Of a stretch of DNA of 64,000 nt, positions 41,386-64,000 are shown one piece after another (the stretch's first letter is position 1; every line of letters begins with the position of its first letter). The position numbers and the translations under genes were made by a program. The stretch spans positions 1,562,100 to 1,626,099 of the forward strand of contig NW_003314267.1 of assembly GCF_000143415.4 (NCBI RefSeq), given 5' to 3'. This DNA is from Selaginella moellendorffii. Lineage: Eukaryota; Plantae; Lycopodiophyta. The notes under the pieces were generated by a model. That model was not told the origin of the DNA, did not search any database, and saw only the letters and a program-made list of their open reading frames with translations.

Positions 41386-42255
41386 CATGGGCATATCCGA
41401 GCTTGGTGCGAGCTGACGTCACCGTGTCCACCATTGCGTCATACATGTTGCTGTAGTGGACGCGTCCGTGACGCCCGGTCGGAGCCGAAGCGCGCGTACG
41501 TTGGTCGCGTGGCTGAAGAAAGGATAGGCTGACGCGTCCATGACGTTGAAGGCGTGCGGCGTGAAGACCACGGTGCCGGCGGTACGCAGCGCGGTGTACG
41601 ACTGTACGGCAGACTGGACGTCCCGGAAGGATGACGCGTCCATGACGTTGAAGGCGTGCGGCGTGGAGGCCATGGTGCCGGCGGTACGCAGCGCGGTGTG
41701 CGACTATACCGCGAACTGGATGTTCTGGAGGGCCGGAAGGCGTACCGCGCGTTGTTTGTGAGGACCTTGTTGCCGATGGAGATGGCGGGGAAGCGGACGG
41801 CGGAGATGAAAGGGGCGATGGAGGCGTCCAGCCAGGCAGCGGGGCTGGAGGCGATTTGCTGGAGCTGCTCGTCGGGGATGGAGACGCTCAGATCGATGCC
41901 CGAGTTTGCGAAAGCCGGGATCAGCGTCGAAGATGCGCGCCTTGGTGATGTTGTTGGATTTGAGCAGCGCCACGACTTGCGACGGCGACGGCGGATTGTC
42001 CCAATCTGCCATACTTCACGCCGATGCTCGCTCCCCAAGAGAGGAATAAAATCGAAATAGGGAGAGAAAGAGATTTAAAATGTGACCGTTTTGTGTCTGG
42101 AAATGAAAATGCGAGGGCTGGAAGACGAGGAATCATGGGGAATCTTGCCAAGAGGATCTATAAACTCACCAGGAATCCCCTCCAGCGCAGCCAAAACCGC
42201 AACGAGCAGCAGCACTATCACCAGCAGCCGATTGAATCTCACTCCCGCTTCCATG
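41386..42255 (-). pseudogene. Degenerate copy of the GH17 glucanase, with a 102-bp internal tandem duplication (41530-41733)
   Basis: High identity to ~48093-49063 with frameshifts, small deletions and loss of the 3' end. Confidence 0.92.
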
Positions 42256-42399
42256 GAATCAATCAATCAATCAAAGAGAAGGAATCGCCCAAAGCGTTTA
42301 CGATTGATCATTGAGCACACAGAGAGAGAGCGAGAGAGAGAGAGAGAGAGGTGATGAACTAAAACGCTTGTTCACTACATCGGCTTAAAGTAAAAATTC

Positions 42400-42665
42400 T
42401 TCATTTGATCCAGTAAAAACTCTCCACCATGGAAGAACTCTTTCACAGGAAGGATCGTGATCATGGTGGTGGGATTTAGGGTTCCAAGGCTATTCAGCGG
42501 CCAGAATCTGAGTGACAAGCTCAACAGCACGCAGCAGAGCTCCGAGAGTGATCGGTTTTTGGATCTCACGCTCACGGCCTGCGAGTGGAGTTACTGGAAA
42601 AGATGACGCCAAGAACGTATGTCGACGGCTTTTTGGAAATGCTCTAGTGACGATCACAGAGCGAC
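42400..42665 (+). pseudogene. Collapsed copy of the promoter and 5' exons of the CID gene
   Basis: Blocks match ~49330-49420, ~49706-49725, ~49788-49855 and ~50233-50335. Confidence 0.85.
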
Positions 42666-43254: not shown

Positions 43255-44097
43255 CTAAATTTTACATAATTTGTGTGAATCCCATAAAGCTATATTTGGA
43301 TATTTGGCTTTATAAATAACTAAATTACAGTCATTTTGAATAGTGAATAAGGTTGGTAATAAACAGATTTTCTTATTACATGATATAGTTGAAATCATGA
43401 AATAATTATTATTATAATGCATTAACAAATTTCCATCGTTATTTAATTTAACATAACAGTTATAAATATTATCAATAGAAGTCTTAAATTTCCAAATGAG
43501 TCTATCTTCTGAGTATAAAATCAAAATACAGTTTTGTTTTAAAATTAAAATATTCTTTCTGTTTGCAGAAACTAAAAAGTTATCTGCATAAATAACTGAA
43601 CCAGGATATAAAGTACTTATTCTAAGGTAACAAATTAACACATTATCAAATGAGTTTAAAAGAAAAACATTTTCAGAATCTTTTAATTTATAATATATAA
43701 CATAGTTTTTGCTTTCTCCTTCAAAATAATCTGAAAGATTTTCATAGAGTTTATCCTTATACTTATTTAAAATTGTTTCTATACCTGCTATAATATTTCC
43801 ACCTAAAATTCTAGTAGGTGTATCTTCAATAGTGCATTGATCTTTTGTTTTAATTATTAATTCAATAAGCCCTTTTGATGTATCTATTTCCATTTCATCT
43901 CCAAAGGTTGAAGAATAATCACTTTTGCGATTGAGTTTGAATAATAATTCATATATTCCAGCAATTATTTTAGTAATATCTTGTGTATTTAAGATTCTGA
44001 CAGTTCCAAATTTAGGTGTATATTTTTTTGGAGCAATCACATGTAAAATATAAAATGAAAACAATGAAAAATATATGAAAATAAATATGAGCTTCAT
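43255..44097 (-). CDS. Secreted protein: signal peptide, unknown ~130-aa domain, bulb-type (GNA/B-) lectin domain
   Basis: Intact 280-aa ORF; hydrophobic N-terminus; TLYPG..FLVS.N..LILKQNCILILY..IW, KLNNDGNLL, TIQNDCNLVIY..ALWDS (QxDxNxVxY motif). Confidence 0.7.
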   Translation of the reverse strand: MKLIFIFIYFSLFSFYILHVIAPKKYTPKFGTVRILNTQDITKIIAGIYELLFKLNRKSDYSSTFGDEMEIDTSKGLIELIIKTKDQCTIEDTPTRILGGNIIAGIETILNKYKDKLYENLSDYFEGESKNYVIYYKLKDSENVFLLNSFDNVLICYLRISTLYPGSVIYADNFLVSANRKNILILKQNCILILYSEDRLIWKFKTSIDNIYNCYVKLNNDGNLLMHYNNNYFMISTISCNKKICLLPTLFTIQNDCNLVIYKAKYPNIALWDSHKLCKI

Positions 44098-44098
44098 C

Positions 44099-44146
44099 TA
44101 TATATATATCTGTGTGTGTGTGTGTGTATATATATACACACACACA
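44099..44146. repeat. Compound (TA)n(TG)n(TA)n(CA)n microsatellite directly upstream of the lectin ATG
   Basis: Read directly; partly self-complementary. Confidence 0.9.
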
Positions 44147-45823
44147 TTGATATGGGTTTTATTTTAATATAACAGCTAGTTTATAAATATAATTAAATAT
44201 TATTTTTCATAATTATTATATTTTACTATTTCTATTGGCTTACTGCTCAAATATGTACCTTAGTTTAGAAATAGTTATCCTTATTTGAGTTTATTTCCCT
44301 TGGGGATTTGTATGGTGATATACCATAATTTATTTACATTATTGCATGGTCTATAAGTCCTTAAAACTTGTAGGAAATAGTGTAAATAATAATATTGAGA
44401 ACTCTTTGGTTATTGTTTTTCAGTAAGGTATATGATAAATGATATTTAAGCATATGGTGCCAATGAGTTTAATTATTATTGATTGTGGCTATTAAAATAT
44501 TTTATATCTCTAAGTAAAATATATGTGTTTTCTTCTATGTAATGTAATTACACAACTCTCAATTCCATCTAGTGAATTAAATACTTTCATGAACTAGTAA
44601 GAGAACTAAAAGAATGAGATTTTCATGAATAGTTTGATGTTTAAAATTTAGATTCAAATTAATGCTTGAATAATGGAATATATGTAAAATATTTGGAGTA
44701 TTTGATGCTTTATAGGGTTAAAATGTTGTGATTGTTGTAATATTGAACTATATGACATATTTAGTTGAAGTCTTGCCATTTTGAAGTCATTTTTACTAAT
44801 AGTTTATGTTATATTTTTTTTCCCAATTGTGAGTGCCACTAAGAATTATTGATACTTAGAAGTTTGTTTGTTCTTTTGAGAATGTGAAATCTTCCTTTCA
44901 TTTTCTCATCTCAAGTATTGAGTTAATGTAAAAGAACTTGAATGAGTGGGTTTTCTTATTTTGGCCAAAGTATTTTATAATGTAATGAACTCTATTATTC
45001 AACCTTGAAAAGAGTCTTTTATAATAGAAGATCCCATATTATCCAAGCCTTAAAAACACATTTTCTTCTTTTATTTCCTTGTTTTTACTTTAACTATTGC
45101 TAAAGTTTTTGTTTTTAGTGTTTTTTATTCATATTTTGTTCTTCTACATGCTTTCTTCCTCAACTTTTCTAATTTTTTCCTCTTTTCTCTAATGTTTGAA
45201 ATTTTTTTCTACTAAGGAGGGATGGATAGGAGTTTGATGTAAGTCACAAATTTTTCTTTTCTGATTTTTTAACTTACTTTCCCTACTTAACCATTTTTGT
45301 TTTGGCTATAATAAAATTCTTTTTGCCAAAATCTAAGCTTAATATACAAGCTTTACTACACAAATAATAAAGTGTGTGGTGGTTGATCATTTGGTCCCTC
45401 TTCCATATCTATTAATTCATTAATTGGTGAAGTTAGTGGTGAATCTACTGGCGTTTTTACATCTGGTATTGATCTTCTCTTCAGTAGAAGGATCATCTAT
45501 AAAAAAGGAAATTAGATGAACTTAACTACCTTATTTACCTGAGTTTAGATGTGGATACTTATTATCCCATTGTTTTTGAATAAGCTTGATACATATATTA
45601 ATATACTCCGTCAAAGACTGTTTTACTCTTCTTTCAACCAACTTTAGTCTATATTAAATGGCAAGTTTAGATTTACACTTTGGCAATCAAGTTAGTTTTC
45701 ATTGCATCACTCTTAGTTCTCTTTGCAATCAACAAAAACAAACAAGCTTTTGTCTCTCATAAATAGAGCCATGGTCAATATTAAAAATTTTAGACTTTAC
45801 CCCTTTTAGCAAGAATGGTATTG

Positions 45824-46055
45824 ATGCTTTATTTCGTTAAAGTGGAACTTATTCAGTAAAGTGGGACATTAATTAGCATGTGTCCACATACCATTTCCTA
45901 GTACTTAATTAATATTTATTAATATTTCTATCAGTTTTTTAATTTATAAATTATAAAGCTAAAACTTCAATTTTTTATTGTTGTTATAAAAATGGCATGT
46001 GGCCACACACCATAAGTGGGATAATGAAAAGTTCCACTTTAATGAAATAAAGCAT
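45824..46055. mobile_element. Putative 232-bp MITE with 27-bp TIRs and a flanking ATTG direct repeat
   Basis: atgctttatttcgttaaagtggaactt / aagttccactttaatgaaataaagcat (1 mismatch); attg at 45820-45823 and 46056-46059. Confidence 0.55.
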
Positions 46056-55983: not shown

Positions 55984-56390
55984 GGTTCTGGAAGATGGAA
56001 GATCGATCTAAACAGGTTGGGTGGTCGCACGAGCTTATGTTGGAAGTTCCGATGGACGGACGGCGGACTCCCACAAGGCCGCATTATTGGGAGACAGGAC
56101 AAAGACCAACAGTTTTGTCACTGGGACCGAGGAGAACAAAAGAAACACTTTTCTTCGTTACCTCTTACAAACAAAGTCTATCGGGCTGGAGGAGGAAGAA
56201 CTCTCAAGTTTTCCGTATCGTCTCACAGACTTCATTGATAAAGGTAACGACATAGTAGTTTAAGATCTCCTCTTACATGTTTTTCTTTTCATTGTTTTTC
56301 AGGCGCCATGCTTCCAATTTGAGGAAACTTGCGGAGTGTTACAGTGAAGAAAATGGCAGGACGGGGGAAGAGAACTGCTAGACGAGGGTC

Positions 56391-56879
56391 TTAGGAGGAA
56401 GCTCTGAGAAATCTGGCCACGGCCCTTTGGCCCTCCACGACGGCTTGCTGGGACAGCTGCCCGGGCAAGGCGAGCTTGCAGGCGGTCTGGATGTCCTTGG
56501 AGGAGAGCGTGGCCGCCTTGTTGCGCCGGACCAGCTCCGCCGCCTCTCTCGCCAGCCTCTCAAACATGTCGTTCATGAACGTGTTCATGATATCCATGGC
56601 CGTGGTCGATATCTTGAGATCCTGGTGCGTCGTCGACCGCAAAACCTTGAGGATGTAGCGCTTGTACGTGTTGCTCGCCGCCGCCTTCTTTCGCTTGCCG
56701 GATCCAGGAGCTTCTGCCGGAGTCGCTGGAGCTTCAGTTTGGGGCTGCGCCGCTGGAGGAGCTTCGGATTTCGTCGAGGGAGTCTTCTTGGCGGGAGCTT
56801 TCACCGGAGGCTTCTTCATCGTCTTCGCCGGCACCTTCACTGGCTCCGCCACACGGGCGCTCTTCGCCACCTTTGCCAT
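56391..56879 (-). CDS. H2B: Divergent histone H2B variant with long K/P/A-rich N-tail
   Basis: TYKRYILKVLR..ISTTAMDIMNTFMNDMFERLAREAAEL..TLSSKDIQTACKLALPGQLSQQAVVEGQRAV; TATA-like sequence ~30-55 nt upstream. Confidence 0.9.
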   Translation of the reverse strand: MAKVAKSARVAEPVKVPAKTMKKPPVKAPAKKTPSTKSEAPPAAQPQTEAPATPAEAPGSGKRKKAAASNTYKRYILKVLRSTTHQDLKISTTAMDIMNTFMNDMFERLAREAAELVRRNKAATLSSKDIQTACKLALPGQLSQQAVVEGQRAVARFLRASS

Positions 56880-57034
56880 GCTGCAAAGGCAAACACAGCC
56901 CAAGCAGTATATATATATCCCTCCATTATAAAAAGTCACTCTCAAGCTCAGGTATGTCCGTATAGAATATGTTGTCCGTACGCAATATCTCCGTACGGGA
57001 AACGTCCGTACGTAAAATGTTTTTTGCTAAGCGT

Positions 57035-57123
57035 GATGGAGCGGAGCTGCTGCTCGTCGTCCCTTCCAGGCATAATCTCCTCGCTAGCGTCATTGTATGG
57101 GAATAATCCCTCTTCTCCCCAAA
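57035..57123. repeat. Displaced fragment of the HTH-psq gene (copy of ~59215-59340)
   Basis: Shared cgtcgtcccttccaggc.taa.ctcctcgctagcgtcattgtatgggaa. Confidence 0.85.
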
Positions 57124-57324
57124 TGTGACGTGCCTAAGAATCGTACACCAAGATTCTTTACAACCCGAAAAAGATCATGCATATCTCTCGTTTGAGCATA
57201 GTTTGGAGGCTCAGAGAAGAAAGTTAGGCGTTCCTGTAAATGAAGTACAATGCATAGCTGATGAGCCGGTTAAACTAACTTTCTATTCAAGAGAGCGGAA
57301 TTTGCTTCGTAAACAACAATACCC

Positions 57325-57917
57325 TCACCCTGTATGTATAAGCCTCCTCGTTGTCGTCTGGAACATAAATGGGCATCTCAACATGCATACCTCCAAGAGC
57401 TCGTCCCTTTTCTCCCTAAACGGCGGACACAAGGCCCCACTCGACGCAGTGCCCCGAATGTCATCCAGAACACCAGCTTGCACCTCAAGCCCCTCTTGCA
57501 GGCTGCCTCCACACGCGTTTGCAAGTTGCCGCAACGCTTGCTCCACTTTCACCAGGCTTGTATCATCCTCCTGTTCCTGACTCCCATCCGCGATGTAGTG
57601 CTTGATCTTGATCACGTTGAGCAGATACTTGTCGAGCGAATATCGTCCACGATGATGTTGCTAAGGTTCCGTCCCAGCCAAGTCCTGCAACAAGGTGTTG
57701 CCGGTAGAGTCTGTGCGAGAAGATTGGATCCAAAACCTGCAGCGCAGCCTCGGCATACGGCTGCGCCGGCCATGGCGTGCAAGAAAGAATCCACACCGGG
57801 TCTCTTAGCCATGTAGAATCTCCACACAGGAGGCAGCCTCGCGCGCATCTCATGTAGGCCCTGTTCCAGCAATGGCCATCCATCTTTTGTTGCTGACGCT
57901 ACACGGCCAATAGTCAA
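57325..57917 (-). other. Two abutting ORFs of unknown identity (possible pseudogene fragment)
   Basis: Coding-like GC content; ORFs 57612-57917 and 57325-57615; no recognised motif. Confidence 0.3.
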
Positions 57918-58132
57918 TTTGATGTCAAAGCAGCGCAGCAGCTAAGAAGAGGAAGGAGAATATTCTTTGATAAAAGGGTTGTCCGTTCAGAATATTTTAT
58001 CCGTACACAAAGGTGTATATTCCGTGCATTAGGTTAGACTTTTAAGTGAACTTGTCGTCCACATTTTGTAAAAACGCCATAATCAGTCAAACTATACGTG
58101 TGTTTCTTGTTGCAAGAGTAAGCACAGCGCAG

Positions 58133-60829
58133 CTAAACCAGAGTATGGTGATGGTGGTGAGAATGGTGGTGCTGGTGCTGCGAGTGATGGTGATGAGCGA
58201 TGTTAGCGTCGGAGCGATCGCAGCAGCTTGCCCCTGGATTGTTGGCGGTGGGAGCGGCAATGATACCGCTCCCTCCGCCGCCACTTCCACCGCTCGGATG
58301 GTGCTGGTGATGCTGCTGCTGCTGCTGCTGCTCCAGAGCTCCTCCTCCTCCCGCCATGGCCGACTGCTCGCCTTCTTCCTCCTCCTCCTCCTCCGCCTCC
58401 TCCTGGCTGCTGCTCTCAAACTCCTCCGCCCGCTGCACCAGCGACAGCTCCATCTTGTCCATCTCGCCCTCCACCTTCCGCCGGAGGATCTGCAAGTGCT
58501 CCCCGGTCACCATATGCACCACCGACATCTCGTCGATGAGGCTCCGGTTCTGCGCCTCCTGCAGCCCCTCGCCCACCCGCGCCGCCACGTCCGGGTGCCG
58601 CCGGTTGAACCACACCCACCACTTCTTCACGGGGATCCCGTCCTTGAACGGCGAGCCTTTGTTCACCGACAGCGGCGCCACCCTCCGCCGCAGCGAGTTG
58701 AGCGTCATGAGCGACTGCGATACCTGCTGGATGCTGAAGAACCACTCCACGATGGCCGACTCCTGCTCGCCCCTCGTCATTCCTCCGTGCGGGCCTCTCT
58801 TCCTCGAGTGCGTCCTCCCGTTGAGCCAGTTCCTCAGCGTCGTCCTGGGGATCCCGTAGCACTGCCCGGCCTTCCGGATGGAGATCCCGTTCTTGATCGC
58901 CGCGAGAGCGTTGTGGAGCGCCTGCTCCGTCCACCCGTTGCTCTTCCTCGACTTCTCGTCCGACTCTTTCATCTCCCCGGACTCAAACTGGCCCTCGTCT
59001 TCCTCCTGCTTGCCTTCACCACCACCACCACCACCACCACTCGGGCTTCTCTTCTGTGCACCGTTGAGCGTGTACTTGAGTGTCGAGCGCGGGATCCCAA
59101 ACTGCTGCCCCGCGCTGCCGATAGTGCAGGAGCCACTCTTCACGGCTTCCACGGCATCTAGCAGCGCCTGCTCTGTCCATTTGCCACCTTTTCCCCGCTT
59201 CTTGCCTCCGGACATGGAGATCTCCGCGGACTCGAGCTGCTGCTCCACGCAGGCGTCGTCCCTTCCAGGCGTAAGCTCCTCGCTAGCGTCATTGTATGGG
59301 AAGTCTTCCCCAGTCATCCTAACACCTTCTTCTCCCAAACTAGAGTCTCCCTGCTCGAAAGCGAGAGATGTGTGCGGGCCGCGTTTCCGGGACCTTGTCC
59401 GACCTGTTATCCAATTCCTGAGCGTTGTCCGTGGTATGCCATAAGCCCGGCTTGCTTTGCAGATCGTCAAGGTGTTGTTTTTAATCGCTTCCATAGCCTC
59501 CATCAGCGCCTTCTCCGTCCAGCAGCCAACTTTCTTCTTCCCTTCTCTGGCCTTTTTCTTCAAACGCTCCTTCTTCTCGCCACCATCAGGAATCTGATCG
59601 TCACCACCGTCCTCCTCGTCGTCATCTTCGTCGTCTTCCTCATCATCCTCATCGTCATTCATCTCCGCCACAGCCATTGCATAGGCATCCTCCCTGCTAC
59701 CATGGAATGGCTGCCCGTATACAGTAACCTCGGTCCCTGACGACGATGACTTCTTCTCTTGCTCCTTCATCCAGTAGTCAAGCGTCGAGTTTGGAATGCC
59801 GTAAACCTGTGCTGCCTTGCTCACCGCCATGCCCCCGTTCCTCACAGCGTTGAGTGCCTCAAACAGCGTATGCTTCGTCCACACTCGCCTCCTCTTCCGC
59901 AGCAAACTATCCTCCTTACTGTCACTCCCATGTCCCTCCTCACCGGAGTTTAACGTCACCTCGTTCCCCATCATCAGCGTTCCGGGATGCTGATCGCCCT
60001 GCATCTCCTGGCGACAAAACGAGAGAGCCTCGTCTACTTTCGGCCCGCGCTTCCTAGACCTGTTCCTCCCGTTCAACCAGTTCCGCAAAGTCGACCGAGG
60101 AATCCCAAAGTCCTTGCTCGCTTTGTAGGCTGTCAAGGATCCACTTTTCACAGCCGCCACCGCGTCGCACAGAGCCTGCTCCGTCCATCGGACTTCCCTC
60201 GTCCGCTTCGAGTCGGGCTGGTCGCTATCGTTTCTCAGCTCGTCATCGTCGTTGGCATCGCAAAGAGAAGGATCCTCCCACCTCCCACCCTCCGCTTGCA
60301 TGACTACGTGGTGCGAGCCATCTAAGACGTGGTGAGCTCCTTCCATCACCGAGACGCTCTCGGCCCGGCCACTGTAGAGTGGCTGCTCCCACCGGACCTC
60401 TTTCACGATCTGGTGCTGCCCTCCACCGCTGCCATCGCCTCTAGCATCGCAGAACCCCTGCTCGGTCCATCGGAGCTCTAGCTTGTTCACGGCCTGGTGA
60501 TGATCATCGTGGGAGCCGGGAGCTACCACACCCATTCCTCCTGCTAGAGCCACCAGAGCCTGCTGGCTTCCTTGCAATTCGCCCTCTCGCACGCCATACT
60601 GCGCTGCCACTCCCTGGAGATCCTCCCGGAGCACAAAATGCTGGCCATCCCTCACGACGTACTGACCAGGAATGTGGTGGTGGTGATGCTGCTGTTGCTG
60701 CTGCTGATGGTGGTGATGGCTCTCCGGTGCCATGGCGAAGTGATGCACGCCCTGGAGGTGATGCTCGCTCCCATCCCTCACGGAATCCATCTGCTGCTGG
60801 CTCAGCGACAAGACATTCACAGCGTCCAT
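58133..60829 (-). CDS. Intronless DNA-binding protein: five pipsqueak-type HTH repeats and a CENP-B/Tc5-type HTH (pogo transposase-derived), His/Gln-rich ends
   Basis: Five WT(E/K)xxL..A..A(V/I)(K/R)...A...(F/Y)GIPx(S/T)TL repeats, then QESAIVEWF..LNSLRRRV..SPFKDGIPVKKWWVWFNRRHPDV; no DDE domain. Confidence 0.85.
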   Translation of the reverse strand: MDAVNVLSLSQQQMDSVRDGSEHHLQGVHHFAMAPESHHHHQQQQQQHHHHHIPGQYVVRDGQHFVLREDLQGVAAQYGVREGELQGSQQALVALAGGMGVVAPGSHDDHHQAVNKLELRWTEQGFCDARGDGSGGGQHQIVKEVRWEQPLYSGRAESVSVMEGAHHVLDGSHHVVMQAEGGRWEDPSLCDANDDDELRNDSDQPDSKRTREVRWTEQALCDAVAAVKSGSLTAYKASKDFGIPRSTLRNWLNGRNRSRKRGPKVDEALSFCRQEMQGDQHPGTLMMGNEVTLNSGEEGHGSDSKEDSLLRKRRRVWTKHTLFEALNAVRNGGMAVSKAAQVYGIPNSTLDYWMKEQEKKSSSSGTEVTVYGQPFHGSREDAYAMAVAEMNDDEDDEEDDEDDDEEDGGDDQIPDGGEKKERLKKKAREGKKKVGCWTEKALMEAMEAIKNNTLTICKASRAYGIPRTTLRNWITGRTRSRKRGPHTSLAFEQGDSSLGEEGVRMTGEDFPYNDASEELTPGRDDACVEQQLESAEISMSGGKKRGKGGKWTEQALLDAVEAVKSGSCTIGSAGQQFGIPRSTLKYTLNGAQKRSPSGGGGGGGEGKQEEDEGQFESGEMKESDEKSRKSNGWTEQALHNALAAIKNGISIRKAGQCYGIPRTTLRNWLNGRTHSRKRGPHGGMTRGEQESAIVEWFFSIQQVSQSLMTLNSLRRRVAPLSVNKGSPFKDGIPVKKWWVWFNRRHPDVAARVGEGLQEAQNRSLIDEMSVVHMVTGEHLQILRRKVEGEMDKMELSLVQRAEEFESSSQEEAEEEEEEEGEQSAMAGGGGALEQQQQQQHHQHHPSGGSGGGGSGIIAAPTANNPGASCCDRSDANIAHHHHSQHQHHHSHHHHHTLV

Positions 60830-61401
60830 CCCGCGCAGCGCTAGCGCTCTCACATCCTGCCCAAAACGCGCGTCAGAGCTAGAACCCTAAAATTTCTTGC
60901 AAGAACTGGAGAAAGTGGGGAAGAAATCTCTCCAAGAAAACGCCCCCGGAGAGCTGGGAATCCCGAGAGGGAGCGCGGCTTGCTCACCTCGACATCCGGA
61001 GGACGCGCCAAGAAAATGCCGCAGAGATTAGGGCAAGAGATCCAGGAGAAGCGGCGATCGTAGCGCCGGCGTCACGCATCTTAGAAGCATCCTTGCTCAA
61101 GAACCCTGGATGGAAACCGAAGAGAAAAAAAATTTGATCCGAAAGAACTCCCACTGAGAAAGAGAAAAACATTTCATTTATCTCGCCTAGTTTAAGCTAC
61201 AAAATGCTTCGCATCTGCGCCGTCCGATGCCAAGCGGTACCAACGGCCACGATCCAGAGCGACACGGACGGACGAGATTGAGGTGCAATCTTTCCGTTAC
61301 AGTCGTGGCGAGTTCCCAGCCGTTATTTCTTGCCAGTTCCAAAGTTCTGGGGAAAACGAAGAGTTCCAAACAAAACAAGTACCCATAGAACGATGAACGA
61401 T

Positions 61402-64000
61402 TCAAGGCACGTAAACAAAAGGCTCGGGAGGAGCTGGCTCCAAATCGACGCCTCCCATTGGGATTGGAGCGGCGGCGGGAGCTCCATTTGCTCCTCCTGC
61501 TGGAGCTGGCGACGCTGGCGAATCGGTGGAGACGAGCTCCACTGGCTCCGACGGCTCCAAGTCTCGCAGCATCACGAATCCCGCCGGAGTTCTCTTCACT
61601 GGAGCGTAGCGGCAGCCCTCCGGGAACCGGACATACTTCTCCTGGAGTGGGATCACTCGCGCTGGATTGCTCAAAACCTCGGAGGTGGCCTCGGGATTTA
61701 CAGCCTTCTTCTCAACAGCACTGTCCACCTGGAACGGGATTCCAAAGTTTCAGCACAAGAACAAGAACGGAAAGAGAGAGAAAAAGAGAGATGGAGTTAC
61801 CTCCATAGCCTCGCTGCCATCTTTCGCTGCTTCTTTCCCTGAGGACGATTCCTCCGGCGGTTCAGCAGTAGAAGCTGCTTCGGACGTGGCTGCCGTGGCA
61901 CCTGTGCTACTGCCGACGTCCATCTGCGAGCTCGTATCAGGCTGCTTCTCTGCCTTCGTCTTCGCGTCTGTGTCTTTCTTTGCTTTCGACTTGGAGCGGC
62001 CGGACGTGGATAGAACCGCCGTGGGGAGCTTGATGTTCACGTTGACGGATGGAGGCGCTGTAGGCGCAGGATATGCAAACAAAGCGGGCTTCGCATCGGA
62101 GATGATGTCAAACTTCGGCATCCTCAGCTCGTGGTTGAGTCCGATGAATGCTGTTGGTGCGAAAGAGAGGCTGACGAAGTAGGTCAGCGGGTACCAGTAC
62201 CAAAACTGGGTGAAAACGGCCATCCCCACGACTGCCATCACCCGGTCGTGACCAGTTCGCGACTGCAGAGATATGGTCACATTCCTGCCTCCGGCATCTA
62301 GTATACCATACGCCAGTATGGCTCCCATCTTGCTCATCGTGTCCTCGTGTTTGTCACTAACAATTTTGTCGAGTTGACGCCTGCGAGAGGAACATCACTT
62401 CTAAGCGTTATACTGCAAATAGCTGACAAACCTGAAAACAGAAACGTGAGGCTCTCGGGCTTCGGTAGCCTGCATCAGAACCATCGCCATAGCCATAAGT
62501 GCTCCCTGGCGAACAAAGTCCACAGCGTCTGACGTCAAAGGTTCCAGAAGCGAGATCGCCTCACTGGACGCAGTTCCAGCACAGGAGATTCCGACAGCCA
62601 TAGCCGCGCCATAACGAACGTGAGCGTTGTACGACTCCGACAAAAGGGAGACAATTTTTGGAGTCTAAGAAAAAAAGAAAATATTAGACGTCGTCATACG
62701 CAAGAGAAATTGTGAATCTTACCTGAGTAGGATCAGAACATAGCACGAATCCAAGAGCTAAAACTGCTGCTCTTCGGACATCGTCACTCACGTCCGAAAC
62801 GGCAAAATGCAGCAGACGGCGGATAGCACTGTTGTTAGACGTGCCTCTATAAGCCAGAGCCAGGGCGTACATGCCACCATAGCGAAGAATAGGATCCTGA
62901 TCCCTTGTCATCTGCTCGATCAAAGTATCTGCTTCTTCTTCACGACCATAGACAACCAGCGCTATTCCAAGAGCCAGCCCCCTTATAATCTTCTCGTGTT
63001 GTGTATCGTGAGCGTACGTGAGCATTTCTCCGGCTTTATCGCTGGCGCTTCCAACCATAAGCAGACCCATAGCAATCCCTGCCGCCTCGCCAGCGATGGC
63101 GCTGTCTGTATACAGTACATGTTTTATGTCTTCGTAGATTTCATCGTCGGCAGTGCCCAGTGCGGCTAGTCCTAATCCAAGACAAGCACCATGTTGGATC
63201 ACCTGCATCACAAGTACCAAAACATTATTTACAAACGTCTTACTCAGAATGACGCTTACCTCATTGTTTGTCTTTCTCAAGCTCTCTAGTAAGAACGACT
63301 TGATTCCTTCACCGTGGTTAGCATGTATTAGTCCTAAAGCGTAAAGAGCTCCACCTTCCGAGTATGGACTTCCCCCACCAGTCCCACCATCTTGAGGTAG
63401 ATATGGGGCCATTAAAGAGCGGCCCTGCTGCAAATGACCTCTGTGAATAACACCCAGCCCAGCCGTTGCACTAAACTTTGCCCAATTGGTGGCCCGACTC
63501 AGCCAATCCTAACGATATGCTCTTCAATCAGCCGCAGCATTAACAACAAAAAAAGAACGCTCACCAGATTATCGCGCAAAAACGTATCCACTGTTGTCCC
63601 CGCATGCATCAAAGCATTTGAGTATATTGTAGCGCTGTGACAAACACTGTTTCTCGTTTCAACTGAATGCTTGATAGTCTTCAGAATAAGGAGGTCCGAC
63701 CTGAAAACATAGCAGGCATAAGAATCGAGAAAGATAACAGTGGTCTTACTTGTTACGGCTGTATAAAAACTGTAATGTGAGATTGATAGGTGTTTCTCCA
63801 GAAAGAATGCCCTTCAATTTCCCCATCCTGTCGACATAGATATTATCCTGGGAATCCTCGACGTTAGTGGCTGCTTCTGCACTTGTTGAAACGTCCATCA
63901 TTCCGTTTTGTTCTGTAGTTTCCGTATTTTCACCCCCGCCTGAACTACTTCCAGCCCGAGCCTCAGGCAAACGGTCCCTCACGTTTAGTAGGAACAGCTG
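61402..64000 (-). CDS. RPN2: 26S proteasome regulatory subunit RPN2 (5' part lies beyond the window)
   Basis: [92 protein letters not shown]. Confidence 0.96.

What the first reader, a model, noticed from the sequence alone, without database searches (positions are those of the whole stretch)
58133..60829. Plant pipsqueak-like protein: domesticated pogo DNA-binding region with five HTH-psq repeats
Seen: five HTH repeats (~60070-60190, 59765-59885, 59400-59525, 59060-59180, 58815-58935). Repeats 1, 3 and 5 end LRNWxxGRxxSRKRGP while 2 and 4 lack it, suggesting duplication of a two-repeat unit. Three eroded W-motifs lie upstream (RWTEQGF, RWEQPL, RWEDPSL). Repeat 5 continues into a CENP-B/Tc5 HTH as in pogo transposases, after which the DDE domain is replaced by an acidic and polyQ/H tail. 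No TIRs seen; ORF intact. Knowledge: multi-psq factors (Pipsqueak, LCoR) and CENP-B are known mainly from animals and fungi. Inference: an independently evolved plant psq-type transcription or chromatin factor.
Basis: partly seen in the sequence, partly recalled or inferred. Interest (0 to 1): 0.8.

Follow-up and report, generated by a model that had tools for sequence, protein, structure and literature searches.

The report
Transposase-derived five-HTH DNA-binding gene in Selaginella
A spikemoss (Selaginella moellendorffii) gene that is expressed, spliced and under purifying selection encodes five Pipsqueak-type DNA-binding motifs plus one Tc5-type motif. These come from the DNA-binding head of a pogo-type transposase whose cutting domain is gone, making it a plant example of a recycling known mainly from animals and fungi.

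Summary
The minus-strand ORF 60829..58133 (898 aa) has five Pfam HTH_psq domains (E 7e-51). Repeats 1, 3 and 5 carry the LRNWxxGRxxSRKRGP tail. There is no DDE domain, and no terminal inverted repeats (TIRs) flank it.

- **Second HTH:** The stretch after repeat 5 is missed by Pfam HTH_Tnp_Tc5. A profile built only from relatives that Pfam does recognise hits aa 688-758 at 1.5e-21.
- **Transposase origin:** aa 621-770 aligns colinearly with the N-terminal head of psq+Tc5+DDE_1 transposases. The nearest relative by identity sits in a 4.7-kb element with 28-nt TIRs and flanking TA.
- **Organism and locus:** The organism is Selaginella moellendorffii. The only near-identical protein is the allele on the other haplotype, in the same RPN2/histone H2B context.
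- **Expression:** RNA contigs from four studies cover the gene, with a spliced 131-nt 5'UTR intron. Both alleles are expressed.
- **Selection:** Allelic pN/pS is 0.20 (P 0.001). The five repeats form one clade, with saturated synonymous sites but conserved residues.
- **Moss parallel:** A Sphagnum protein (5 psq + 4 Tc5, no DDE) built its own array independently.

Verdict: a real, probably domesticated pogo DNA-binding-domain gene. It is a new plant member of a known kind. Its function is untested, and genome-wide copy number could not be checked.

The parts
58133..60829 (-). Coding sequence, 898 aa plus stop, a single coding exon
   Evidence: Identical to database protein P0001. Covered by RNA contigs.
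60987..61132 (-). 5'UTR exon 1. It holds short upstream ORFs that end before the main ATG.
   Evidence: Contigs of runs X2 and X11 both end at 61132 and join 60987 to 60855. Sequence read.
60856..60986 (-). 5'UTR intron, 131 nt, GT..AG on the minus strand
   Evidence: Joint 60855>60987 with CT..AC ends in three runs. Sequence.
58055..58132 (-). 3'UTR (approximate end)
   Evidence: Contigs end at 58055-58076, and depth is zero at 57394-57590 in all four runs.
60194..60829 (-). N-terminal His/Gln-rich low-complexity region (aa 1-212). It holds three helix-1 stubs: RWTEQGF at 60443-60475, RWEQPL at 60374-60397, RWEDPSL at 60254-60286.
   Evidence: The first stub is 81% identical over 31 nt to the start of repeat 1 (D4).
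60041..60193 (-). psq repeat 1 (aa 213-263), with the GRNRSRKRGP tail
   Evidence: Pfam HTH_psq. Profile stretch 207-264.
59750..59887 (-). psq repeat 2 (aa 315-360), no RKRGP tail, the most diverged repeat
   Evidence: Pfam best stretch 330-365. Matches LCoR 2cob at E 8.7e-07.
59375..59527 (-). psq repeat 3 (aa 435-485), with the GRTRSRKRGP tail
   Evidence: stretch 427-496.
59045..59185 (-). psq repeat 4 (aa 549-595), no RKRGP tail
   Evidence: stretch 543-603.
58787..58939 (-). psq repeat 5 (aa 631-681), with the GRTHSRKRGP tail. It is the first half of the bipartite transposase-type head.
   Evidence: AF2 model helices 15-26, 31-38 and 42-49.
58556..58768 (-). Tc5-type second HTH (aa 688-758)
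   Evidence: HTH2 profile i-E 1.5e-21. 40% identity to the Pfam-positive Tc5 region of P0039. CENP-B 1HLV Z 6.8 over both halves. Pfam itself gives no hit.
58430..58555 (-). Predicted long helix (aa 759-800). It is the remnant of the segment that precedes DDE_1 in the transposases.
   Evidence: The BLASTP alignment to P0016 runs to aa 766. AF2 helix 126-168 of the model.
58136..58429 (-). C-terminal acidic and then Gln/His/Gly-rich tail (aa 801-898), in place of the DDE domain
   Evidence: No Pfam family found. Allelic indels occur only in G, E and Q runs.
57026..57118 (-). Stray 93-nt copy of the repeat-3/repeat-4 linker (aa 499-538), about 1 kb downstream of the gene, inside a haplotype-specific insertion
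   Evidence: 49 nt at 96% identity (D5). tblastn 60% over 40 aa, and 57017-57161 has no counterpart in L001.

Best explanation
This is a host gene of Selaginella moellendorffii made from the DNA-binding head of a pogo-superfamily transposase of the psq + Tc5-HTH + DDE_1 type. The catalytic DDE domain was lost and replaced by an acidic, Gln/His-rich tail. The psq motif was then copied four more times within the gene, giving five psq HTHs followed by one Tc5-type HTH.

Shown here:
- the domain make-up and the homology to transposase heads;
- the absence of DDE and of TIRs;
- one locus in two haplotypes;
- transcription with a spliced 5'UTR intron;
- purifying selection, both between the alleles and among the repeats.

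Inferred: the protein is nuclear, since basic patches precede every repeat. It would bind DNA sequence-specifically with several HTH units at once, so it should favour long composite or tandemly repeated sites. Pipsqueak binds GA repeats and CENP-B binds its box in this way. Its low-complexity acidic and Q/H-rich ends would recruit transcription or chromatin machinery. Likely targets are sequences descended from the ends of the parent pogo family, or other short tandem motifs.
For: - Five HTH_psq domains at E 7e-51.
- Colinear alignment of aa 625-766 with psq+DDE_1 transposases.
- Exhaustive HMMER: 1326 relatives at E<=1e-3, and 47 of the top 149 carry DDE_1.
- An HTH2 profile hits aa 688-758 at 1.5e-21.
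- The AF2 model (pLDDT 85.8) shows two three-helix units. Its best structural match is the CENP-B bipartite domain 1HLV, Z 6.8 over 111 residues. The clade profile hits LCoR at 2e-4 and CENP-B at 1e-3.
- The nearest relative, P0035, lies in a TIR + TA-flanked element with a DDE_1 ORF. The Selaginella locus has neither.
- The two haplotype copies share RPN2 and H2B neighbours and are colinear at about 97.5% identity.
- RNA contigs from 4 runs in 4 studies, with a spliced UTR intron, correctly spliced RPN2 introns, and little or no depth downstream of the gene (none at 57394-57590 in any run). Both alleles are seen.
- Allelic differences are 10 synonymous and 7 non-synonymous, pN/pS 0.20, P 0.001.
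- Repeat pairs show pS 0.52-0.77 against pN 0.27-0.40, and all five keep the (F/Y)GIPxxTL turn and helix 3.
- The repeats are monophyletic at support 95.
Against: - No DNA-binding, localisation or phenotype data exist.
- Pfam's own Tc5 model does not score the second HTH.
- Copy number in the whole Selaginella genome could not be searched. The 'single locus' reading rests on the protein databases holding only the two alleles.
- No orthologue in another lycophyte was found. Conservation beyond this species is therefore unproven, which is odd for an array whose repeats are this old.
- The runs were labelled 'RNA?' by guess. Their RNA nature is inferred from splicing and from the lack of depth in the intergenic stretch downstream.
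- Contig depth cannot give expression level.
Confidence: 0.72

Rival explanations
1. It still serves a transposon. It would be a DDE-less product of a pogo family, acting as a repressor or helper that binds the family's ends (in the manner of a KP-type truncated transposase), or the cargo of a non-autonomous element. It would not be a host factor.
For: The head domain is transposase-derived. An earlier first-stage note, not checked here, reports a pogo transposase elsewhere in this genome. No orthologue outside the species was detected.
Against: The gene has no TIRs or TA duplication, whereas a relative has both. It is one syntenic locus between ordinary genes in both haplotypes. It has its own spliced 5'UTR exon. 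The fivefold internal amplification, with saturated synonymous sites, shows long coding constraint on one gene rather than on a turnover-prone TE copy.
Confidence: 0.12
2. It is not a lycophyte invention. It would be a member of an old land-plant gene family shared with mosses, domesticated once before the two lineages split. The Sphagnum 1534-aa protein (5 psq + 4 Tc5) and the Ceratodon psq+Tc5 protein would then be orthologues or paralogues.
For: The Selaginella unit falls in one 62-row clade (SH-aLRT 87) with the Sphagnum, Ceratodon and Adiantum proteins. The Sphagnum gene has no DDE, has introns, and lies among host genes.
Against: The same clade holds DDE_1-bearing transposases, interleaved with the DDE-less proteins. 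Sphagnum units are monophyletic (99) and Selaginella repeats are monophyletic (95), so the arrays were built separately. The repeated unit differs: psq+Tc5 in Sphagnum, psq alone in Selaginella. The neighbours are not shared. Nothing outside the HTH units aligns.
Confidence: 0.15
3. It is a transcribed relic with no function. A dead transposase fragment would keep an open frame by chance, or through its low-complexity composition.
For: About a third of the protein is low-complexity sequence. Function is untested.
Against: The frame stays open for 2.7 kb although the repeats are saturated at synonymous sites. Allelic pN/pS is 0.20, P 0.001. Allelic indels fall only in homopolymeric runs and keep the frame. 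Every repeat retains the psq signature residues and passes Pfam.
Confidence: 0.03

Closest known systems
Drosophila Pipsqueak and other animal multi-psq factors (LCoR, E93, mblk-1)
   Same: It shares tandem HTH_psq motifs (Pfam PF05225) used as a DNA-binding array. Sequence matches reach LCoR (2cob, E 8.7e-07) and insect mblk-1/E93 proteins. The pogo-related origin of the motif is accepted in the literature (PMC10027918).
   Different: It has no BTB or other partner domain. It has five repeats plus a retained Tc5-type HTH. It has plant lineage-specific relatives. The repeats arose inside this gene, so it is an analogue and not an orthologue.
CENP-B, Jerky, Abp1/Cbh: pogo/Tigger-derived centromere and chromatin proteins
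   Same: It shares the bipartite head of two HTH units taken from a pogo-superfamily transposase. 1HLV is the best structural match for repeat 5 + HTH2 (Z 6.8, 111 residues), and the profile hit is E 1e-3.
   Different: CENP-B keeps a DDE-derived core and a dimerisation domain, and its first HTH is of CENP-B_N type. Here the DDE region is gone and the first HTH is psq-type and multiplied fivefold.
psq + HTH_Tnp_Tc5 + DDE_1 transposases (the head type that Gao et al. 2020, PMC7386202, assign to Fot/Fot-like pogo elements)
   Same: aa 621-770 is colinear with their N-terminal 150 residues. Clade mates P0057, P0089 and P0139 have the full architecture. The nearest relative lies in a TIR/TA-bounded element.
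   Different: It has no DDE_1, no TIRs and no target-site duplication, and it carries four extra psq repeats and low-complexity ends. PMC7386202 reports land-plant pogo elements only as Lemi in eudicots, with another head type. The moss, fern and lycophyte clade seen here is not in that survey.
Sphagnum troendelagicum CAK9198581.1 (1534 aa, unnamed)
   Same: It is also a plant protein without DDE, built of repeated pogo-head units. It was the best hit of the exhaustive search (E 8e-90) and shares 34-37% identity per unit.
   Different: Its repeat unit is the whole psq+Tc5 pair (5 psq, 4 Tc5), and its gene has introns in the coding region and different neighbours. Its units form their own clade (99), so the array was built independently.

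Membership tests
HTH_psq domain family (Pfam PF05225) | Score above Pfam's gathering threshold, with a three-helix HTH and the GIPxSTL turn/recognition helix | tested here: met
   170.1 bits against a cut-off of 20.4, in five stretches. All five repeats carry (F/Y)GIP(R/N)(S/T)TL. The AF2 model shows three helices for repeat 5.
HTH_Tnp_Tc5 (Pfam PF03221) second HTH | Match to the Pfam model | tested here: not met
   No hit at E<=1 for the whole protein, nor at E<=10 for aa 682-818 or 682-906 scanned alone.
HTH_Tnp_Tc5 (Pfam PF03221) second HTH | Homology to bona fide members at the same position, after the psq HTH | tested here: met
   A profile built from 59 relatives without the query hits aa 688-758 at i-E 1.5e-21. 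The aligned relatives P0032, P0035, P0037 and P0039 are Pfam-positive there. Identity to P0039 is 40%.
pogo-superfamily transposase (active or autonomous) | DDE_1 catalytic domain | tested here: not met
   No DDE_1 or DDE_3 hit. phmmer with three DDE regions finds 47 relatives but not this protein.
pogo-type transposable element (autonomous or not) | Terminal inverted repeats with TA target-site duplication, in multiple copies | tested here: not met
   No flanking TIRs. The only flanking 21-nt pair is 81% complementary, lacks TA, and has one arm inside the RPN2 3'UTR. As a positive control, L004 shows 28-nt, 96% TIRs with TA. Copy number across the genome could not be searched.
Domesticated (exapted) transposase gene | Fixed single locus, transcription, and purifying selection | tested here: met
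   Syntenic in both haplotypes. Spliced RNA contigs from four studies. pN/pS 0.20, P 0.001.
Domesticated (exapted) transposase gene | Orthologues kept in related species | tested here: inconclusive
   No close relative appears in 5.8 billion clusters by word search, and none groups with it in the exhaustive search. Other lycophyte genomes could not be searched directly.
Pipsqueak family proper | BTB/POZ domain plus C-terminal psq repeats, with orthology to insect psq | tested here: not met
   No BTB hit. The repeats arose within this gene.
CENP-B family | CENP-B_N + Tc5 HTH + DDE-derived core + dimerisation domain | tested here: not met
   The CENP-B_N hit (E 1.3e-10) only overlaps the psq repeats. 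No DDE-derived core or dimerisation domain was found.

The most novel reading that the evidence does not exclude
At least two early-diverging land-plant lineages, a lycophyte and a peat moss, independently turned the DNA-binding head of one plant-resident pogo lineage into tandem HTH-array proteins. The Selaginella protein would be a plant counterpart of Pipsqueak or CENP-B, reading tandem repeats (TE-end-derived, GA-type or centromeric) and organising chromatin there. That would add pogo to the short list of transposon superfamilies that have given plants regulatory proteins.
Probability: 0.3. Interest if true: 0.65.

Novelty: new member of a known kind. Interest (0 to 1): 0.5.

Why it matters
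Plants are known to have recruited MULE, hAT and Harbinger transposases as regulators: FHY3/FAR1, DAYSLEEPER and ALP1/HDP. Pogo recruitment is documented for animals and fungi. The papers found here describe no plant case, and PMC7386202 reports land-plant pogo elements only as Lemi in eudicots.

This gene, together with the separately built Sphagnum array, would show three things. Non-seed plants host a psq+Tc5 pogo lineage. That lineage has been co-opted. Multiplying HTH units is a repeated route to new DNA-binding proteins.

It also gives a concrete, testable protein for asking what a five-HTH array recognises. The limits are plain: function is untested, and only one species is shown to have the gene.

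Tried and rejected
- **Pfam on the post-repeat-5 piece alone.** No Tc5 hit. Homology had to be shown through relatives.
- **Foldseek against the PDB.** Nothing at E<=0.001. Only the VIA-align re-ranking put CENP-B first, at a modest Z of 6.8.
- **ESM Atlas feature search.** It returned only generic psq clusters, scores 0.86 or lower.
- **Word-index protein searches.** Searches with aa 200-800 and aa 621-790 found no close relative beyond the gene itself.
- **Search with the DDE-bearing clade mate P0057.** It gave 111 relatives, almost all unnamed metagenome or Logan proteins, so the host range of the parent TE lineage stays open.
- **Decayed Tc5 HTHs after repeats 1 and 3.** None found, even with all HMMER filters off and E 100.
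- **Linker-to-linker similarity** (a test of the two-repeat-unit duplication). All z-scores were 0.9 or lower. The psq tree pairs R2 with R4 only at support 54-60. The idea is neither confirmed nor excluded.
- **A 21-nt inverted pair at 57475/61271** was considered as a TIR and rejected. It is 81% complementary, has no TA, one arm lies in the RPN2 3'UTR, and 11-nt seeds are expected by chance in a 12-kb search.
- **The TIR of the related element L004** is absent from the window.
- **Not possible with these tools:** searching the Selaginella genome or other lycophyte genomes for further copies or orthologues, and naming the organisms of most relatives.
- **P0033, an unnamed ENA eukaryote** with the same layout (8 psq, then psq+Tc5), could not be placed because no DNA was served.
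Full report
**What is there.**
On the minus strand, an uninterrupted ORF runs from the ATG at 60829 to the stop at 58133-58135 (898 aa). Pfam finds five HTH_psq domains (170 bits, E 7.1e-51). The other HTH families listed in that scan overlap the same stretches.

Repeats 1, 3 and 5 end LRNWxxGRxxSRKRGP. Repeats 2 and 4 do not. Each repeat is preceded by a basic patch. The linkers are acidic or Gly-rich. The N-terminus is His/Gln-rich, and the C-terminus is acidic and then Gln/His-rich.

The three upstream 'RW' stubs are present. The first is 81% identical over 31 nt to the start of repeat 1. All three tryptophans in the first 210 residues sit in this motif.

**The second HTH and the transposase link.**
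Pfam's HTH_Tnp_Tc5 model does not score the region after repeat 5, even when that region is scanned alone at E<=10. Three lines of evidence nevertheless place it in that family:
- aa 625-766 aligns colinearly with the first ~150 residues of psq+DDE_1 transposases (BLASTP E 2e-11, 3e-11, 2e-10).
- It is 40% identical (E 2e-30) to Ceratodon purpureus KAG0597716, whose matching stretch Pfam calls HTH_Tnp_Tc5.
- A profile of the second HTH, built from 59 relatives without the query, hits aa 688-758 at i-E 1.5e-21, and nowhere else in the protein.

An AlphaFold2 model of aa 621-790 (pLDDT 85.8) shows two three-helix units followed by a long helix. Foldseek matches were weak. On re-alignment, the CENP-B bipartite DNA-binding domain 1HLV ranked first (Z 6.8, 111 residues, both halves). 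The clade profile also hits LCoR (2e-4) and CENP-B (1e-3) by sequence. No DDE domain exists.

**Relatives.**
An exhaustive HMMER search with aa 621-800 against 1.84 billion representatives gave 1326 hits at E<=1e-3. Of the 149 best hits other than the protein itself, 47 carry a DDE_1-like region downstream. P0057, P0089 and P0139 are psq+Tc5+DDE_1 by Pfam.

The most identical relative is P0035 (41%). It is the first ORF of an element with a DDE_1 ORF 300 nt downstream, bounded by 28-nt, 96% TIRs with TA on both outer sides. This is a textbook pogo/Tc1-mariner signature.

In a tree of 141 units, the Selaginella unit sits unresolved in a 62-row clade (SH-aLRT 87). The named members of that clade are all plants: Sphagnum troendelagicum, Ceratodon purpureus and Adiantum nelumboides. 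Most members are unnamed metagenome or transcriptome proteins, so 'plant lineage' is likely but not proven. Gao et al. 2020 (PMC7386202) list land-plant pogo elements only as Lemi in eudicots and assign the psq+Tc5 head to Fot/Fot-like elements. The clade seen here is outside that survey.

**Gene or transposon?**
The organism is Selaginella moellendorffii. The 90% cluster holds only this protein and XP_024543944.1 (900 aa). That second copy lies on another scaffold between the same neighbours: RPN2 upstream and an H2B-like histone downstream. It is colinear with the window at about 97.5% identity over more than 15 kb. It is therefore the other haplotype's allele.

No TIRs or TA duplications flank the gene. 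One 21-nt, 81% pair was examined and dismissed.

Contigs of four runs from four studies cover 58055-60855. In three of these runs the contigs join 60855 to 60987 across a 131-nt GT..AG intron, and in two they reach an upstream exon ending at 61132. The same runs splice three RPN2 introns correctly and leave the stretch downstream of the gene with little or no depth (none at 57394-57590 in any run). They are therefore RNA. The differences seen in run X11 are those of the other allele, so both alleles are transcribed. Upstream ATGs in exon 1 open only short ORFs that end before the main ATG.

**Selection.**
Between the alleles there are 10 synonymous and 7 non-synonymous differences (pS 0.017, pN 0.0033, ratio 0.20; binomial P 0.001). 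The indels are in-frame and fall only in G, E or Q runs. Among the five repeats, synonymous sites are saturated (pS 0.52-0.77) while pN is 0.27-0.40. All five keep the (F/Y)GIPxxTL turn and recognition helix. The array is therefore old and has been kept as protein.

**History of the array.**
The five repeats form one clade (SH-aLRT 95), with order (R5,(R3,(R1,(R2,R4)))). They therefore arose inside this gene from the transposase's own psq, which is repeat 5. R2 and R4 pair only weakly, and the linkers share nothing.

The Sphagnum protein CAK9198581 has 5 psq + 4 Tc5 and no DDE. Its gene has introns and lies among ordinary genes. Its repeat is the whole psq+Tc5 pair, and its units are monophyletic (99). 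The two plant arrays were thus built independently.

**How it probably works.**
This part is inference. The protein would be nuclear and would bind DNA with up to six HTH units, so it should prefer long composite or tandemly repeated sites. Its low-complexity ends would recruit transcription or chromatin factors. Candidate targets are sequences derived from the parent pogo family's ends, or short tandem repeats. Nothing here tests this.

**Novelty.**
Recurrent co-option of pogo heads is well known in animals and fungi, for example psq, CENP-B and Jerky (PMC10027918, PMC7386202). Searches of the paper library found no report of a plant psq or pogo-derived factor. A main survey of plant TE-derived genes mentions neither pogo nor mariner (PMC4948706). 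I class this as a new plant member of a known kind.

**Earlier notes of this scan.**
Another first-stage note describes the allelic copy in the same terms (s1-385074). A further note mentions a pogo transposase elsewhere in this genome (s1-420820), which is a lead for the parent element but was not checked here.

**Limits.**
- The Selaginella genome and other lycophyte genomes could not be searched for extra copies or orthologues.
- Expression level and tissue are unknown.

Noticed in passing
window 57017-57161 (copy at 57026-57118): A 93-nt copy of the gene's repeat-3/repeat-4 linker (aa 499-538) lies about 1 kb downstream, roughly 150-240 nt upstream of the H2B-like gene. 49 nt of it are 96% identical to the source. 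It sits inside a stretch that the other haplotype lacks, and it looks like templated filler DNA from a repair event.
   Followed up: partly
window ~56389-56877, minus strand (L001:13698-14186): An H2B-like histone gene of 162 aa, with a long Lys/Pro/Ala-rich N-terminal extension, lies directly downstream of the psq gene.
   Followed up: no
window 61155-64000, minus strand: This is the 3' part of the 26S proteasome subunit RPN2 gene. RNA contigs of all four runs confirm introns at 61727-61798, 62380-62430 and 62665-62722. Its transcript ends only about 25-130 nt upstream of the psq gene's first exon.
   Followed up: partly
window 60987-61132, minus strand: The 5'UTR exon carries several upstream ATGs. 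Their short ORFs end before, or just inside, exon 2. One allele has an 8-nt deletion at 61076.
   Followed up: partly
L002:10001-15955 (Sphagnum troendelagicum OZ019904.1): A 1534-aa moss protein with five psq and four Tc5 HTH domains and no DDE. It is encoded by an intron-bearing gene between PRP39-like and SYF2 genes, and is a second, independently built plant HTH array.
   Followed up: partly
P0033 and P0041 (ENA sample ERZ25878582, contigs of 1.07 Mb and 0.49 Mb): An unnamed eukaryote carries two proteins, each with a copy on both contigs, with 8-10 psq repeats. One of them (1417 aa) ends in psq+Tc5, the same layout as the Selaginella protein. No DNA was served, so the organism is unknown.
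   Followed up: partly
L004:4428-9168 (JGI metagenome 3300061195): A complete-looking pogo-type element of about 4.7 kb, with 28-nt, 96% TIRs, flanking TA, and psq+Tc5 and DDE_1 ORFs split by a gap. It is the closest relative of the Selaginella unit by identity. The same locus recurs in other metagenome samples.
   Followed up: partly
window 41394-42653: Sequence 86-96% identical to the glycosyl hydrolase 17 gene end of the allelic locus (L001:20180-22401), but about 6-7 kb away from the allelic position. It is probably a nearby paralogous or duplicated fragment.
   Followed up: no
window 44001-46000 and 1-4000: Marked AT-rich islands (GC 0.26 and 0.33-0.38) in a window that otherwise averages about 0.5 GC. 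They were not examined.
   Followed up: no
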